DNA of 64,000 nt. It comes from Mytilus edulis. Its lineage: Eukaryota. The position numbers and the translations under genes are program-made. Location of the stretch: positions 59,892,001 to 59,956,000 of the forward strand of contig NC_092350.1 of assembly GCF_963676685.1 (NCBI RefSeq), given 5' to 3'. Of the stretch, positions 1-8,442 are shown one piece after another (positions within the stretch are counted from its first letter, which is position 1; each line of letters starts with the position of its first letter). A model generated the notes under the pieces. The model did no database searches and was not told the DNA's origin. It was given only the letters and a program-made list of their open reading frames with translations.

Positions 1-197
1 CCCCATTACTCAAAAATGTAAAATCTGAATTTTTTAGAATTCTAAAAGGAGCTTACTTCATAAGATATAAGCAATTAACCAAAGTTTTATGCAAATTGGT
101 GCAAGCCCTTTTTAGTTCATGTCCAACATGTTGATTACAGACAGACTGGACAGATGGACAATGGTATACCACAATACGTCCTGTAAACAGACGTAAA
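1..197 (+). repeat. 3' end of a Helentron-associated (HINE/pearl-like) non-autonomous repeat
   Basis: ACAG/GGAC microsatellite (acagacagactggacagatggaca) followed by a short terminal hairpin (tacgtcctgtaaacagacgta); lies in a transposase intron. Confidence 0.45.
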
Positions 198-2554
198 CAA
201 TGAAAGTTAAAACTTACTAAGGCCTGTGGTTTCTAAGTCAAACACCAACAAAGGTGCAACTGTAATTGCTTCTTTGTCAAATTTGTCTATTTCCATAACT
301 TCAGGAATTTCTTCTTGATCTGGATGTTCCAGTCCTAGAACAAAAATTGTATGCATGAAGTATAAAATTGATCACATGATAAGATGACATTGACATTGAA
401 TCAGTTGTTAGAATGATGACATCAGAGACACTTAAAAGTGTATATTACCAGCAGTTTCCTAACTTTTTTTTTCTGCTGTTTCTGAAATCTAAACATTTTA
501 TCCAATACAGTCAAAAGACAGTTGTATTATAAAATTACACAATATTGTAATGTGATTTTTTTTTAACCATTTGATGGTGGATACATGTATTTGCAACAGG
601 CAGGTTTTACTGAATTTTGACCACAAAAAAAGCTAGATATTTTTTTTTTAATTTCAAATAAATGTATCTAGGTTATGTACTTATCAGTTATCAGATCATC
701 TTAATATAATAATTTAAGTGAAAAAACTCAAAACACATATTAAACTATCTATTAGTAAAAGCAAGTCCAATTAAGCAAATTAACATCCAAACAATGATAT
801 GTCATGAGATGATGACAATGTCAATGTAAGTGTAAAATTACATGTACTTGTTCATGGTAGATGATACCAAAAATAACTCAGTATGTAAAATAATCACCTA
901 TTTCACTTCCGTAAGTTTTTCCTTCTCTGACTTCCATTCCAGAATTCTTGGAACTTCTTTTCTTCTTCAGAAGCAGACGTTGTTTTTTTCCCTCTCTTGT
1001 CTTCGAAACAGTTGACTTTCTGTCTCTCTTTCTGTTTTATTTCAATGATCTCTTCAATGTTTCAGTACCAGGTGATAATCCAGATGAGTCATGTACCTGT
1101 AATAAGTTTAACATTTAACATTTGATGGAAAGGGGAAACATTTAGTGGCTAAGCCAGTCTGATATGATACAACATGTACAACAGAATATTGGCAAATATA
1201 AGATAGATAGAGGAGTAAACGTTTGTAGCTTATACAATCAATGCTTTACTTGAAAGCAGGGAGGTAAATTTGAATTATGAATTTGCACTTATTCATGAAC
1301 CTTGCCCAGTTGTTGTGTTTTCAAGTCTAATTTTATTTTTGTAATTTAATTGTTATTGAAGATCTTTGGTTCACAGTTTTTTTAGAATCTTAGTGATCAA
1401 CATCTTGTTATTCCAAAATTGTAGACACTTTTCATTGTTGAAGGTCTTATAGTTAGGTGTAAATGTATATTTGTAATTTTCTATATTGCTATTTTACATT
1501 TACACTAAATTTGCTTATGCACATAATATTAACCATATTTTACACTAACCTCAGACACATAGCTATAGCCTTCATTTTTCTGTAGAACTGCTGAACTAAC
1601 TCTGTAGCTTAAGCTGGATGAGGCAGAGTAATGTTTGTATTTTGGTGCTTTAGTAGCTATGGTCATATTCAAACTCTCATTAGCTTGAGAACTTGCTAGA
1701 TTTGCCAGTTTCTTTGAGTTTGGCACCAATTTATCCAAGAACAGTTTTTCAAGATCAGACTTCAAGTCCAAAGATTTTAAATCTTTGCCATGTGGAAGGC
1801 TTGAATGTTTGTAGGTGGTTTTGTCTTTTAAGTAGCCACACCAACTTTGCACACAGTGTGCATGTTCACCAAAAATGTGATCAATCGACGCCCTTAACCC
1901 ATTTTCTATTCCAGTTTGGTTTCCCTTATTTTGGTCAACCATGTAGGCAAAGTTTCTGGTAATAGCATTTATCACCATTACAGATAATTCCTTATGCTTT
2001 GGCTTCATGCTGTATAATTTGTTGACGATATTTTTGGTTACATGATTGCGATCACTAGTTTTCTCCATATGAAGATCCGGCATTTCCTTAATGGCTCTGT
2101 TGTATCCAGTTGAATCATCATCCCCAGCAAGTTCTGATATTGGGACATTTTGTTCCTTCAAATCACGGATCATCTGGACAACCATGTCAGGCTCCATTGC
2201 TTTTGCTGATCCAGTCCAGTTTTTAGAGCACTTATGTTTTCTGGGTACTTCTCCTTTTCTGTTTGCTATGCTGCATACTCTGCAATCCCCAGATCTCATG
2301 GTATGATGCAGAACTTTCCCAGTCTTCTGTCCAATAAGTGATGCTACTCCTGAAATCAAAATAAATACATATATGTAAATAGTCATATAAGTCACTAAGC
2401 TGTAACAAAGAAGTGGGAACATATCAAATTGTTAAAATCAGTAAAGAGAAACTCAAACTTCTTTGAACAACCACACAGACATCATCATAACATTATTTGA
2501 ACATAAAAAAATATCTGTCTTATTTAAAATCTGTATAGTAAGAGCCAGATTTTA

Positions 2555-3488
2555 TCAAAAAAGGATCCATGTTTAGATTCAGCATATCAAAGAAGCCCAA
2601 GAATTTAATTTTTGTAAAAATCAAACTTAGTTTAATTTTGGACCCTTTGGACCTTAATGTAGACCAATTTGAAAACAGGACCAAAAATTAAAAATCTACA
2701 TACACAGTTAGATTTGGCATATCAAAGAACCGCAATTATTCAATATTTGATGAAATCAAACAAAGTTTAATTTTGGACCCTGATTTGGACCCCGACTTGA
2801 AAACTTGGTCAATAATCAAAAATCTATGTACATTTTTAGATTCAGCATATCAAAGAACCCAAAGGATTCAATTTTTGTCGAAATCAAACTAAGTTTAATT
2901 TTGGACCCTTTGGACCTTAATGTAGATTAATTTGAAAACAGGACCAAAAATTAAGAATCTACATACACAGTTACATTCGGCATATCAAAGAACCCCATTT
3001 ATTCAATTTTTGATGTAATTAAACAAAGATTGATTTTGGACCCGGATTTGGACCAACTTGAAAACTGGGTCAATAATCAAAAATCTAAGTACATTTTTAG
3101 ATTCAGCATATCAAAGAACCCAAAGGATTCAATTTTTTGTGAAAATCAAAAATATAAAATTGAGAATGGAAATGGGGAATGTGTCAAAGAGACAACAGCC
3201 CAAATTTCATAGATTTCTATTTACTTATACTAAAGTTATGGTGCGAAAACCAAGAAAAATGCTTATTTGGGCCCCTTTTTGGCCCCCAATTCCTCAACTG
3301 TTGGGATACCAACTCCTAAAATCAATGCCAACCTTCCTTTTGTGTTCATAAACCTTGTGTCAAAATTTCATAGGTTTCTATTTTCTTATATTAAACTAAA
3401 GTTATAGTGCGAAAACCAAAAGTATTTGGACGACAACATGATACCAATATACGACCACAAAATAAAAAAAATTGCTGTCGTATAAAAA
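2555..3488 (+). repeat. Composite non-autonomous repeat with internal tandem subunits (Helentron/HINE-like)
   Basis: Reiterated tagattc/tggcatatcaaagaac...tttaattttggaccc units; the same subunit occurs inverted at 45195-45380. The 3' part ends gacgacaac...atatacgacc...gtcgtataaaaa. Confidence 0.6.
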
Positions 3489-4016
3489 ATGACTGAACTT
3501 GATCTTTGTTTCATGGTAATAAGCATCATGTATCAGTTTTATAAAATAAAGTTAATGCAAACTTGAGGACTTACAGAACAGACAACGGAAACATTTGATA
3601 ACCCCCCTCCCCTTATTCCATACCCTTTTGTACTTGTTGTGAGTGGCCAAGACAAGGGAATCTTGCCAAAAAGAGAATTAGCTTTATGTAGTAGGGCAGG
3701 TATAATATTTATTTAATGGAAAGCGGATTATGCAAAATGTGAAGAGTCAAAAATTTATTTTATGCGTCAATAAATGCAAAATAAATTATTGCCATTCATT
3801 ATAAATAAATTTCTATCAAAAATATGGCTCAAAGCACTTTTTATATTATTTATATTAACAATAACAACGTACACACATGGTTGCATATGAATACACAACG
3901 TCAGAGTGGGCGGGTCGCCATTAAGATTGACAACATTGAAAATAAAACTCAACATTTTAACCAATCAGAAGACAGTAAAAACACCAAATTTATTTATTTT
4001 CATGTGCATCTAGGCA

Positions 4017-4592
4017 AAAGGAGTAGGTCCGGTAAGAGCCCTTTTTGGCCCCAAAATATAGCAGTTTTACAAAATTCTGAAAATGTAAACTTTTAGTTAT
4101 TTATTGGATAGTAGAATGGTTCTGCTACATAAATATTGGCTGTTTTTGGCAATGCAATGCACATATATTGAGAACTAGCACCATTAAGTCATGCTAAATT
4201 ACTGAAATCATCAAAATTCAAGCATTTTAGTTAAATTTTAGACGGTTTCCGTGTAAAACAAAAGTGGCCGCATTCGTGTTCATCCAAAATATTTAAATGG
4301 AAGTTGTATTTGATGATAATACATAACATATATAAAGATTGAGGATGAACACGGATGCGGCCACTTTCATTTTTGACAAAAACTATCTGAAAAGTGACAT
4401 TTTTTCGCATATTTGGTAGGTTTTTCATATTTAAGCTTGAATCGGATCATTTTTTATGAGTTAAAATCTTTCACAAAAAATAATTGAATCAAATGAAATA
4501 GACACTTAAGTGTTTAAAAAGTGGTCAAAATCTTTCGTCAGATGAAACTGAAATTTGAGGCCAAAATCGGTCCTTACCGGACCTACTCCTTT
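4017..4592. mobile_element. MITE with terminal inverted repeats (Kolobok-like AGG...CCT ends)
   Basis: AAAGGAGTAGGTCCGGTAAG at 4017-4036 and CTTACCGGACCTACTCCTTT ending at 4592. Central inverted pair AAAGTGGCCGCATTCGTGTTCATCC (4261) / GGATGAACACGGATGCGGCCACTTT (4343). No clean TSD. Confidence 0.8.
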
Positions 4593-6364
4593 GTTTAGTC
4601 AACATTAAACAGACAAGGAAATTCCATACCCTGTTAAAAACATATCTTTCGTATTTCATAGAATCAAACCTTTATATTTACAGGCATAATGATACTTTAG
4701 TAATTTTTTTGATCAAAACAAACCTGATAAACTATTATATGCTCTTCCAGAACCCTTTTTTTGCCAGCATGTGTCTGTTGATGCATGTATACCCTCTTGT
4801 TGTTGACTATCTGAAAGAAAATGAACCAGTTTAATATTGATAAATTTGAAATTTGAAAATGCACTTTTTAGAAATAATGTCCAGTTTAAATGTAGCAACA
4901 TTAATTAACATTTTCACATGTATGGCTGATAATTAGTATTGCATTTGAAGAGTTGATTTGATAGTTTTCTATCAAGATAACTAGTGATACATACTTGTAA
5001 CTTCAGCACAACATGTTCTGAGACAGATACAGTCTGCACCGAATATCTTTTCTAACTTCCAGTCAGATGTCCAATTTTGAACATCCTTTATACATGTATA
5101 TGTGGCAAAACAAAGAATTTTTTAAGACTTTCAAGTCCAACTTGAATTTTGTCATTGATAATGCCGGTGCAACAGATAGGGAGCTAAGGTTTCAGACGAG
5201 ATTTACATATTAAATGTGATATTTATTGAATAAAAGTTGCTTTGTTTGAGAAAAAAAAGTTTGAGGTTTTATGAAGTGTACAAGCTGACACATGTATGTT
5301 ATTTCATATACTGTAACCAGCTGTTTATAAGTTGAAACAATCCTAAAATACTCATGTACAATATAACAAACTCAAAGTTACTCATAACATTTCTTTTTAA
5401 ATGTTTTTCCTCCATTCAGTTGAATAAATAATATATGTTAAAGAAATGGCTTCAACAGCTTCCTCTAACAAAAACTTCCTTTCTGAGGCCTCTGCACTAC
5501 ATTCCATCACCTCACCAATCTCAATTTCTCTGTCCTTCAGGGTCTTGGAGTTTATACAATGTAAATTCATTGCTGCTAGCAGATTGTTTAATTGGGTCTC
5601 CCCAATTCCAGCATGAATCATCCCTGAAAATTTTATGTTAAAATAAGCATCTAAATTTAATAAAATGGATTTGACTTCAAATACTTATTTGTTCAATATG
5701 GTATTTATTAATACATATACTGAAATACATTTTAGTAATACATGTAGTAATCATACTAAAAGCAACATTTTCAGAAATAATTACCTTCTTCTTCATCCAT
5801 TCTCATGAAAAAATAGATGGTTTTTATTTACATGCCGGAAATGCAATTTTGTTTGATACTACACATTAATGACTAATTTTGGTGAAACTATTACATGTAT
5901 TAGCAGAATCTGTCAATTTCTGCTAGTTCAATCTGGCATTCTTGCATGTTTAAACGCACATGCGTGATTTAATTCCTTGGAAAATTTATAAGGTAAACAG
6001 TCATTGTGAAAAAATAGTTTAGAATATGGAAAAAAACTTTCTTACCCTGACCATGGCCAGTACAAAAGAACTTTCCATATTTTATACCTTTAATCTTAAA
6101 GTGGAGAATGAAAACCATTTACCAAATTTCTATTAGCCCTGATTCTATTAATTTTCGCATTGGTGTCAAGTGCATACTGTTTATTATCTGAACAGATTAG
6201 GTTAAAGAGTGTTGAAAATTTTACTGAATCTCAACTAGTTTATTACTTTCTTTTTGAGGTGCATAGTAGAATATGTATTTATTGATACATGTATTTGCTA
6301 ACCGAAAAAAAAAATAGTCAGTCAATTTGTGAGTACTGTATAGATAATAAATAAAAATGTTTCT

Positions 6365-6656
6365 GTTTGTATATGCCTGTCCCAAGTCAGGAGCCTGTAA
6401 TTCAGTAATTGTTGTTTGTTTATGGGTTACATATTTGTTTTTCTTTAATTTTTCGCACAGAAATTAGGCTGTTAGTTTTCTTGTTGACATTTTCATTTCA
6501 AGGGCTTTTATATATCTGACTATGAGGTATTGGCTTAATTTATTGTTGAAGGCCATACCGTGACCTATAGTTGTTAATTTCTGTGTCATTTGGTCTCTAA
6601 CGGTCTTTTGTGCAGAGTTGTCCTATTGGCAATCATACCACGTCCTCTTTTTTATA
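6365..6656 (+). repeat. Dispersed repeat family R1 (non-autonomous, class uncertain)
   Basis: cctgtcccaagtcaggagcctgtaattcagt...ttgttgaaggcc.tac.gtgacctatagttgttaatttctgtgtcatttggtctc...ataccac; other copies at ~6975, 16270, 17705, 32245. Confidence 0.75.
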
Positions 6657-6974
6657 TTGTAAATTCTTTTCATGATCTAAAATTTGTACATCATTGTTAG
6701 TATTACCAGGCTACTTTTTCAAAAAAATTATTAATCCATCAAGGACAAGAATTAAATCAGTCAGTAAGAATCATTATCTCATTGAACCATGCATGCTTCA
6801 AAACAAGCTATCAACTTTTAAACATTCTCATGTGTTTCCATACATATCTAGAATATATATGATAATATCATATATAAATATCTGATTAAATTTATTAAAC
6901 TTTAATACATGTACATGTATTCTTGATATATATTATTTTATAGTAAAGAGAACAAAACAAGGGCCAGTGGACTC

Positions 6975-7106
6975 TGCTGACTATGAGATATGGGCTTTGC
7001 TTATTGTTGAAGGCTGTATATGGTGACCTATAGTTGTTAATTTTAGAGTAATTTTGGTCTATTGTGGAGATTTGGCAATCATATATTCCACATCATCTAC
7101 TTTTAT
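6975..7106 (+). repeat. R1 repeat 3' fragment
   Basis: gctgactatgagatatgggctttgcttattgttgaaggc...gtgacctatagttgttaattt matches 6515-6650. Confidence 0.65.
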
Positions 7107-8442
7107 ATGTATGGGCGAACAAACTCACTGCAGACGAACATGTTATCAGGACAAACGGACCTTATAAGTTATACCGCCCATAGTGGACAAAAAGTTTTTG
7201 TAAGAAATGACTACATGTAGCTACAACATACCTATACCAAAAGTACAATCTCTAATTATAATACATACATGTACACATGATTATTTCAGGGAAAGTCTCC
7301 ATATGACTGGCTCAATGCAATAATTGGTAGTCATTTATAATTGGAAAAGATAATAAAAGAGTAACATATTGAAGTACCTGTAGCCACTTTAGTATTTATA
7401 TCAAAAATACCATTTCCTCTTTTCACTTCAGTGCGATAGTGAGTTTTGCCCAATTTGATTCTGTCAACATTTCCACATTCAGTACACTGAACAAACAATA
7501 TTCCTGACAAGCCAAGGGGTCTGACTCCAAGTGAGTTGTGCAGGTGCAAAGGAGTACAACACTTAGTGCATTGTTGTAATTGTTTGGCAAGGACATCAAG
7601 TTCTACCACAAAACGGCAATAACTTAAATCAACAAGATCTGATGGAATGTATGTGAAGTCTAAGTCAAAATCTACATTGTAATCATTTTCTGCCGAATCT
7701 ATAACGATTTCATTTTGGAAAAAAGGATCAGAACAGTTAGTGGTTGTGGTTTCTTTGACGTAAGGATGGTCGATAGAAATATCAGGGACAACATGTATAT
7801 CAACTTCATCTTCAACAGTTTGTGTTACACAATTTGGTCGGTTGTAAACCAAGTTTTCTACCCTTTTAGTTTTCTGTATTTGTTTATTCTTTGAAAACTT
7901 CCCTCGCTCATTTCTTATTACAGACATACTCCTACAGCAGACGATATTCTGGTTATAATATAGTTTACGGTTGTTCCGATTTATTTTACTTACCATTTGT
8001 CTCGAGTTCTTTCAGGTGCACAGGACTTTGGCTGGTTCATTTCGTAGGTGAAACAGCATATACAAGACATATAAAAACACCGAAATATTCACCAGATTCC
8101 GTCGTTTCCGTTTATTATTTCTTAGTCTACAATAACCGCCTGAATAGTACAAACTACATTAATAACTTTCGTTTTTGACTTCCTTGTTTACATATTTATA
8201 AAACCGGAAGTGCAAAATTTAATAACAAAATAACTCATGAGATAAAAATAAATATAAATAAACGTAAGGTAAGATATTGTATAAATAAACAAATGTTTTA
8301 TTGGTTCAAAACTATTTTTAATACGCTAAATAATAATGTATGAATTGTTGTGACAACTGGCCGGTTTCCGTCATGGATACCGTAACTATGCGCAACTTGT
8401 TGCGCAGTGGGCGCGAAAATTTAAACCCGTGAGCCCCCTTAA

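What the first reader, a model, noticed from the sequence alone, without database searches (positions are those of the whole stretch)
218..8442. Intron-rich Kolobok-type transposase spliced to a DEDD exonuclease domain
Seen: a TTAA|GGGGG terminus, a complete D-D-E transposase core spread over several exons, then two more phase-compatible exons (a basic linker KRDRKSTVSKTREGKKQRLLLKKKR, then ...APLLVFDLETTGL). Established: VFDLETTG is the ExoI motif of DEDD 3'-5' exonucleases (DnaQ/TREX/PML C-terminal type); from memory, described Kolobok subgroups carry other accessory nucleases (His-Me finger, lambda-type). Inference: this lineage encodes a single transposase-DEDD exonuclease protein, which could trim or process transposition intermediates and may be related to PML-like exonucleases. 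Only the first exonuclease motif is inside the window, and I cannot tell whether the fusion is already catalogued.
Basis: partly seen in the sequence, partly recalled or inferred. Interest (0 to 1): 0.8.

Follow-up and report, generated by a model that had tools for sequence, protein, structure and literature searches.

The report
Damaged KolobokD transposon with Plex9-like exonuclease
This is a slightly damaged copy of a mussel cut-and-paste DNA transposon from the KolobokD lineage (described in 2022), whose transposase is spliced onto a 3'-5' exonuclease that closely resembles the fish Plex9 / PML exon-9 exonuclease.

Summary
The element lies on the minus strand and is 13,426 bp long, from G000:C7:59887013 to window 8438. 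It has TTAA duplications on both sides and imperfect GG..CC inverted ends. A 99.4% identical sister copy lies on C12. The genome is Mytilus edulis.

Seven coding exons encode a Kolobok DDE transposase, a basic linker and a DEDDh exonuclease with a SAM-like PML_C tail. ExoII and ExoIII lie about 1 kb left of the window, inside the element.

The window copy is broken in two places. An in-frame TAA sits in the linker exon, where the sister copy and the contigs read TTA. A 247-bp deletion removes the donor of exon 2.

The fusion is already catalogued as KolobokD (Kojima and Bao 2022) and is annotated in RefSeq (XP_071142257.1, 913 aa).

The newer point is the kinship of the exonuclease. Its closest solved relatives are fish Plex9 proteins (E 5e-37; rmsd 1.4 Å), not TREX or ERI1. 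Whether the vertebrate module came from such transposons is unresolved (AU p = 0.195).

This scan reached the same conclusion on three other pieces of this genome.

The parts
8439..8442 (.). Right TTAA target-site duplication. The left one is at G000:C7:59887009-59887012, window -4991..-4988.
   Evidence: Both copies (C7 and C12) carry TTAA on both sides, with unrelated flanks.
8420..8438 (-). 5' terminal inverted repeat. On the minus strand it reads GGGGGCTCACGGGTTTAAA. Its partner, GGTGGCTGGGGGGTATAAA, is at window -4987..-4969.
   Evidence: 14 of 19 positions match between the two ends. The termini are 5'-GG..CC-3'.
7378..7927 (-). Coding exon 1: ATG at 7927, an N-terminal region, and the start of the Kolobok transposase domain.
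   Evidence: Pfam PF20700 positions 3-80, E 1.5e-8. It matches P0171 residues 1-184 with one difference, F135V.
5449..5623 (-). Coding exon 2, truncated. Its last 17 nt and the GT donor are missing because of a 247-bp deletion relative to the C12 copy.
   Evidence: PF20700 positions 78-133. The deletion is seen. P0171 and P0014 read ...ISLNE|D... here.
4724..4810 (-). Coding exon 3, with the first catalytic Asp (ASTDTCW).
   Evidence: PF20700 positions 148-174. D260 is conserved in at least 90% of 16 fusion proteins. A contig joins 4724 to 2349 (loose end at L001 3853).
1550..2349 (-). Coding exon 4. It carries the CCHC zinc finger, the second catalytic Asp (GDDDS), the DxxH motif (SDRNH), the H-H-C-C zinc finger and the catalytic Glu (ANESLN).
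   Evidence: PF20700 positions 172-357, E 9.6e-45. Invariant residues are C299, C302, C317, D353, D355, D376, H379, H434, H439, C442, C447 and E501.
898..1096 (-). Coding exon 5, the basic linker (KRDRKSTVSKTREGKKQRLLLKKKR, which looks like a nuclear localisation signal). In this copy it contains an in-frame TAA at 1039-1037.
   Evidence: Spliced joints 1550|1096 and 898|334. The contigs of runs X1, X2 and X5 and the C12 copy read A, not T, at 1038, giving TTA (Leu563 of P0171).
218..334 (-). Coding exon 6, with the ExoI motif (VFDLETTGL) of the DEDDh exonuclease.
   Evidence: Spliced joints 898|334 and 218|-856. D642 and E644 are conserved in at least 90% of the fusion proteins.
1..217 (-). 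The part of intron 6 that lies in the window. Exon 7 lies left of the window at G000:C7:59890348-59891144 (window -1652..-856). It holds ExoII, ExoIII, the PML_C tail and the stop codon. About 3.3 kb of 3' sequence then runs to the left terminus at C7:59887013.
   Evidence: Open frame, Pfam RNase_T (7.9e-11) and PML_C (2.8e-16). The element boundary comes from the two-copy comparison.

Best explanation
The finding is the 5' two-thirds of a 13.4-kb KolobokD DNA transposon of the blue mussel Mytilus edulis, lying on the minus strand.

Shown here:
- The element inserted at a TTAA site and has short imperfect inverted ends (GG..CC).
- It carries one gene of seven coding exons.
- In intact copies the mRNA encodes a single protein of about 913 aa. 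Its parts are a Kolobok DDE transposase (with a CCHC finger, a DxxH motif and a second zinc finger), a basic linker that looks like a nuclear localisation signal, a DEDDh 3'-5' exonuclease, and a SAM-like PML_C tail.
- The window copy is a recent copy (0.6% from its sister) that can no longer make this protein. It has a stop codon in the linker exon, has lost the donor site of exon 2, and has a Thr in place of the invariant Asn of ExoII.

Inferred, not tested:
- The transposase cuts the element out and pastes it into TTAA.
- The tethered exonuclease trims 3' ends of the excised element or of the broken donor site, or degrades stray DNA intermediates as Plex9 and TREX1 do.
For: Boundaries and mobility:
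- Two copies at different loci are alignable exactly from TTAA to TTAA at 99.4% identity.
- The left terminus is also conserved in diverged relatives.

Domains:
- PF20700 on exons 1-4; RNase_T and PML_C on exon 7.
- The invariant DDE, DxxH, zinc-finger and DEDDh residues are listed.

One transcript:
- GT..AG joints at 1550|1096, 898|334 and 218|-856, and one 593-nt contig across three exons.
- The RefSeq product XP_071142257.1 (P0171) is identical, exon by exon, to the C12 copy.

Family context:
- 52 of 95 near-full exonuclease hits in the genome have a Kolobok transposase hit upstream on the same strand. Several sit in one open frame with it.
- Fusion proteins occur in Mytilus, Saccostrea and Magallana.
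- The KolobokD lineage is described in PMC9587614.

Defects of the window copy.
Against: - No transposition or nuclease activity was tested.
- Runs X1 and X2, which gave the spliced contigs, are only guessed to be RNA. The certified RNA run X24 gave just 1-2 junction reads per joint.
- The 5' UTR and promoter were not mapped.
- Pfam names the transposase family 'Mutator-like', and no Repbase Kolobok sequence could be compared directly.
Confidence: 0.9

Rival explanations
1. In this window copy the two domains behave as separate products. Translation stops at the TAA in the linker exon, and the exonuclease, if made at all, starts from an internal Met (MEVREGK...). On this view the 'fusion' is not real for this locus.
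For: The in-frame TAA at 1039-1037 and an ATG 27 codons downstream in the same frame.
Against: The sister copy, the contigs of runs X1, X2 and X5 and all related proteins read Leu at this codon. The stop is therefore a private mutation of a decaying copy. The copy also lacks the exon 2 donor.
Confidence: 0.05
2. The locus is a domesticated host gene (a transposase-derived exonuclease gene), not a mobile element.
For: Low copy number: two full copies and one fragment. It is expressed and conserved at 91-99% across Mytilus species.
Against: There are precise TTAA-flanked inverted ends at two unrelated loci. Several loci exist in M. galloprovincialis. One copy is decaying without constraint. All catalytic residues of the transposase are retained.
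Confidence: 0.04
3. The element is a piggyBac (because of TTAA) or a Mutator-like element (because of the Pfam name), not a Kolobok.
For: The TTAA target is shared with piggyBac. The Pfam PF20700 label is 'Mutator-like transposase'.
Against: There is no piggyBac transposase domain. The termini are GG..CC, not CCC..GGG. Mutator elements make 8-10 bp duplications (established knowledge), not TTAA. The DxxH motif, the two zinc fingers and the DEDDh accessory domain fit the KolobokD signature in PMC9587614.
Confidence: 0.01

Closest known systems
KolobokD lineage of Kolobok DNA transposons (Kojima and Bao 2022, Mob DNA 13:24; PMC9587614)
   Same: TTAA duplication; RR..YY termini; DDE transposase with a C/DxxH motif, a zinc finger before the catalytic Glu and a CCHC finger after the first Asp; a DEDDh (DnaQ) exonuclease downstream of the transposase; found in molluscs.
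   Different: The paper gives KolobokD only a short paragraph. It likens the exonuclease to Exuperantia, TREX and ERI1, and mentions neither PML/Plex9 nor the SAM-like tail. The family seen here is intron-rich, 13.4 kb long and low in copy number, and the window copy is broken.
Teleost Plex9 exonucleases and the C-terminal DEDDh domain of PML (Mathavarajah et al. 2023, NAR; PMC10123124; PDB 9MRC/9MRD, 9L8B, 9L85)
   Same: The same DEDDh fold and motifs, with 35-42% identity. The mussel protein scores 131 bits against 9L8B, while fish Plex9 subgroups score 165-176 bits against each other and fish Plex9 scores only 23-25 bits against TREX1/2. Rmsd to Plex9.1 is 1.4 Å. The tail hits Pfam PML_C.
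   Different: Plex9 and PML are host genes syntenic with the PML locus. They have no transposase, and Plex9 lacks the PML_C tail. PML joins the module to a RING/B-box/coiled-coil region.
Drosophila Exuperantia (PDB 5L80)
   Same: A two-domain EXO-like plus SAM-like arrangement. It is the second-best structural match.
   Different: Exuperantia is a pseudo-nuclease without the DEDD residues. Sequence similarity is weak (E 1e-6).
KolobokE, KolobokP and KolobokH
   Same: These are also Kolobok lineages that carry an accessory DNA-processing domain downstream of the transposase.
   Different: Their accessories are a lambda-type PD-(D/E)xK nuclease, a His-Me finger nuclease and a RecQ helicase, not a DEDDh exonuclease.

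Membership tests
Kolobok superfamily | [quoted passage not shown] | tested here: met
   TTAA on both sides of both copies, with unrelated flanks.
Kolobok superfamily | Termini 5'-RR ... YY-3' | tested here: met
   5'-GG...CC-3'. The inverted ends match at 14 of 19 positions.
Kolobok superfamily | DDD/E transposase with a C/DxxH motif between the second Asp and the Glu | tested here: met
   D260, D353/D355, D376-x-x-H379 and E501 are conserved in 16 fusion proteins. All are present in window exons 3 and 4.
Kolobok superfamily | Sequence kinship to Repbase Kolobok transposases | not testable with these tools
   Repbase and Dfam are not available. The only hit is Pfam PF20700, labelled 'Mutator-like'.
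KolobokD lineage | CCHC zinc finger after the first catalytic Asp, and a zinc finger between DxxH and the Glu | tested here: met
   C299, C302, H315 and C317; and H434, H439, C442 and C447. The signature is described in PMC9587614.
KolobokD lineage | DEDDh exonuclease encoded downstream of the transposase within the element | tested here: met
   Exons 6 and 7 lie inside the termini and are spliced to the transposase exons.
DEDDh (DnaQ-like) 3'-5' exonuclease | ExoI D-x-E, ExoII D, ExoIII H-x4-D | tested here: met
   FDLETTG (exon 6), GH[N>T]IKRFD and AHNALED (exon 7). The window copy has Thr at the invariant Asn729. Catalysis was not assayed.
PML / Plex9 exonuclease family | Specific similarity to Plex9 structures and the PML_C (SAM-like) tail | tested here: met
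   PF25244, E 2.8e-16. PDB 9L8B, E 4.9e-37, and 9MRC, E 2.5e-28. Foldseek top hit is Plex9.1, with Exuperantia EXO+SAM next.
PML / Plex9 exonuclease family | Fish Plex9 branch inside the transposon exonucleases (direction of descent) | tested here: inconclusive
   The fish clade is nested when the tree is rooted on one distant outgroup (a 97/85 group of 27 rows). The AU test does not reject a sister position (p = 0.195).

The most novel reading that the evidence does not exclude
The DEDDh exonuclease plus SAM-like module of jawed-vertebrate PML (exon 9) and of teleost Plex9 was captured from a KolobokD-type transposon. This would parallel the link already drawn between the Kolobok KolX protein and the P2X7 ballast domain. 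On this reading, the mussel elements preserve the mobile ancestor of an anti-retroelement host nuclease.
Probability: 0.4. Interest if true: 0.7.

Novelty: new member of a known kind. Interest (0 to 1): 0.4.

Why it matters
The element itself is an ordinary, slightly decayed member of a described transposon lineage.

Its value lies in the exonuclease. PML is reported to appear suddenly in jawed vertebrates with an active C-terminal exonuclease of unknown origin (PMC10123124). The papers found here do not connect it with transposons.

Invertebrate KolobokD elements carry the same two-domain module at 35-42% identity. That gives a concrete, testable candidate for its source. It also offers a natural system for asking what a 3'-5' exonuclease does for a cut-and-paste transposase.

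Tried and rejected
- A candidate exon at window 5095-4990 (DVQNWTSDWKLEK...) was rejected. It is out of phase with exon 2 and absent from the main RefSeq and M. galloprovincialis products. It appears only in one older M. edulis model, P0162.
- The supplements of PMC9587614 that are held hold no KolobokD names or sequences, so no named family could be assigned.
- A search for papers citing PDB 9L8B/9L85 found nothing relevant. These entries were placed in the teleost Plex9 family by sequence instead.
- The word-index protein search with the single exon found only Mytilus proteins. The profile search was needed to reach fish.
- The 3.3 kb between the stop codon and the left end holds no ORF above 99 aa. 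It contains a nested high-copy repeat.
- The sturgeon protein P0232 (exonuclease plus PML_C) was left out of the argument because NCBI flags it as possible contamination.
Each exon was searched on its own. Where a full-length sequence was needed, I used the public RefSeq protein of the sister copy (P0171), as returned by a tool.
Full report
**What is there**

The window is G000:C7:59892001-59956000 of a 1.37-Gb genome. The genome is Mytilus edulis. The RefSeq protein XP_071142257.1 (P0171, 913 aa, 'uncharacterized protein [Mytilus edulis]') sits on a contig of 82,303,794 bp, the length of C12. It is identical, exon by exon, to a sister copy of the element on C12.

The feature lies on the minus strand. 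Comparing C7 with C12:18727887-18741584 gives one collinear match at 99.4% identity. It runs from window -4993 to 8442 and stops abruptly at both ends. Both copies are flanked by TTAA on both sides, with unrelated sequence beyond.

The ends read TTAA|GGTGGCTGGGGGGTATAAA on the left. On the right, in reverse complement, they read TTAA|GGGGGCTCACGGGTTTAAA. The two match at 14 of 19 positions. The element is therefore 13,426 bp long, from C7:59887013 to 59900438. Only these two full copies and one 292-bp fragment of this family are in the assembly.

**The gene**

I searched the window's exons one by one and did not join them.

- Exons 1 to 4 hit Pfam PF20700 in order. They cover profile positions 3-80, 78-133, 148-174 and 172-357, with the last at E 9.6e-45.
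- Left of the window, an 825-nt open stretch (window -825..-1649) carries ExoII (GHTIKRFD) and ExoIII (AHNALED). It hits RNase_T at 7.9e-11 and PML_C (PF25244) at 2.8e-16.
ExoII and ExoIII exist, and they lie inside the second terminus.

The exon borders in the window come from the splice letters and the RefSeq model:

| Exon | Window coordinates (minus strand) | Note |
|---|---|---|
| E1 | 7927-7378 | starts at the ATG |
| E2 | 5623-5449 | truncated |
| E3 | 4810-4724 | first catalytic Asp |
| E4 | 2349-1550 | rest of the catalytic core |
| E5 | 1096-898 | basic linker |
| E6 | 334-218 | ExoI |
| E7 | -856..-1652 | ExoII, ExoIII, PML_C tail, stop |

**Transcript evidence**

I laid four public runs on L001, where window coordinate = L001 position - 1500.

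- Three joints with CT..AC ends (GT..AG on the minus strand) were found: 1550|1096, 898|334 and 218|-856.
- They occur in contigs of two runs from two species labels. The certified RNA run has 1-2 raw junction reads per joint.
- One 593-nt contig spans E4, E5 and E6.
- A loose end at 2353 continues with the sequence at about 4728, which gives the E3|E4 junction.
The linker exon, however, begins at 1096, not at about 1035.
- Caveat: the two contig runs are only guessed to be RNA, although intron-skipping joints are hard to explain otherwise.

**This copy is broken**

- In the true linker exon the window has an in-frame TAA (minus strand, 1039-1037). The contigs of runs X1, X2 and X5 and the C12 copy have A instead of T at 1038, giving TTA, which is Leu563 of P0171.
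- A 247-bp deletion at about 5448 removes the last 17 nt of E2 and its donor, which are intact on C12 (...AATGAAG|GTTAGA).
- The window copy also differs from P0171 by F135V, A339D, E546D, E606G, S620P, N729T and T756I. Asn729 is the invariant Asn of the ExoII 'GHN' motif.

**Family features**

An alignment of 16 fusion proteins was made. The following are invariant or nearly invariant:

- the DDE triad (D260, D353/D355, E501);
- the DxxH motif (D376..H379);
- a CCHC finger after the first Asp (C299, C302, H315, C317);
- an H-H-C-C finger before the Glu (H434, H439, C442, C447);
- the DEDDh residues (D642, E644, D734, H792, D797).

These are the signatures that Kojima and Bao give for Kolobok and for the KolobokD lineage. 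[quoted passage not shown] The fusion is therefore already catalogued.

It is also common in this genome and in its relatives:

- At least 145 exonuclease and 146 transposase matches were found in the genome.
- 52 of 95 near-full exonuclease matches have a transposase match upstream on the same strand, at a median distance of 2.6 kb.
- Several pairs lie in one open frame, for example C13:38279518-38281422, with an open frame of 693 aa.
- The exhaustive protein search found 1,696 relatives. About a quarter of the best 150 carry both domains.
- Named examples come from Mytilus species, Saccostrea, Magallana, Pecten, a shrimp and krill.

**The exonuclease and PML**

- By sequence, the closest solved structures are 9L8B (E 4.9e-37, 131 bits), 9L85 and zebrafish Plex9.1 (9MRC/9MRD, about 1e-28). 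Exuperantia scores 1e-6, PolC 2.5e-5, and TREX and ERI1 are not found at all.
- 9MRC is Plex9.1. 9L8B belongs to the same teleost family.
- Fish Plex9 subgroups score 165-176 bits against each other, and only 23-25 bits against TREX1/2. The mussel transposon domain is therefore nearly as close to Plex9 as the Plex9 subgroups are to one another.
- A profile of invertebrate modules finds teleost proteins named 'PML-like', 'PolC-type-like' or 'TREX1' at E 1e-45 to 1e-51. The next unrelated hit scores 55 bits.
- An AlphaFold model of exon 7 (pLDDT 95.5) matches Plex9.1 best (rmsd 1.4 Å, 35% identity). The EXO+SAM structure of Exuperantia comes next. This is the same two-domain arrangement reported for the PML-1 PXL domain (PMC13659232).
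- The 2023 PML/Plex9 paper says PML emerged in jawed vertebrates. It does not mention transposases or invertebrates. No paper in the library links Kolobok to PML in substance.
- In a maximum-likelihood tree the fish clade (100/98) sits inside the invertebrate and KolobokD diversity when rooted on one distant outgroup. The AU test does not reject a sister position (p = 0.195). The direction of descent is therefore open.

**Mechanism**

Shown here are the anatomy, the splicing and the conserved catalytic residues.

Inferred are cut-and-paste transposition into TTAA by the DDE domain, and a nuclear localisation signal in the basic linker. The role of the exonuclease is also inferred. It may trim 3' ends of the excised element or of the donor break, or remove stray DNA. 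This follows Kojima and Bao's suggestion and the known activity of Plex9 and TREX1.

**Verdict**

This is a real, well-bounded and recently copied but defective member of the known KolobokD lineage.

This scan has already reached the same conclusion on three other pieces of this genome. I saw those notes only after my own analysis. They agree with it but are not independent evidence.

Noticed in passing
window 1-205: A separate high-copy repeat of about 190 bp, with 40 or more copies at 73-82% identity. Elsewhere it occurs in tandem, for example at C13:38856133-38856791. Here it sits inside intron 6 of the transposon gene.
   Followed up: partly
window 4017-4592: A MITE-like insert of about 576 bp with 39-nt inverted ends (87% complementary), nested in intron 4. 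An inner hairpin lies at 4236-4392.
   Followed up: partly
window 2568-3161: A tandem array of units of about 130 bp (four copies, 72-91% identical) inside intron 4.
   Followed up: no
L010 6115-6588 (window -3885..-3412): A repeat of about 480 bp, present in many copies across the genome at about 75% identity. It is nested in the 3' non-coding part of the element.
   Followed up: no
G000:C12:622794-625292 and C12:846406-848896: Two diverged relatives (81-93% identical) of the exonuclease half and 3' end of this family, including the left terminus. They look like partial older copies.
   Followed up: no
G000:C14:23105613-23105904: An isolated 292-bp fragment that matches part of exon 4 at about 100%.
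   Followed up: no
G000:C13:38279518-38281422; C5:9987350-9989230; C7:13903426-13905315: Other KolobokD families in the same genome, in which the C-terminal half of the transposase and the exonuclease lie in one uninterrupted open frame of 667-693 aa (no intron).
   Followed up: partly
protein P0226: An M. edulis gene model named AOF1/KDM1B combines an amine-oxidase domain with a PML_C tail that is 90% identical to this element. It is probably a chimeric annotation caused by a nearby transposon copy.
   Followed up: no
protein P0232: A 546-aa protein labelled Acipenser sinensis carries the exonuclease and PML_C but no transposase. NCBI flags it UNVERIFIED_CONTAM, so its origin is uncertain.
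   Followed up: no
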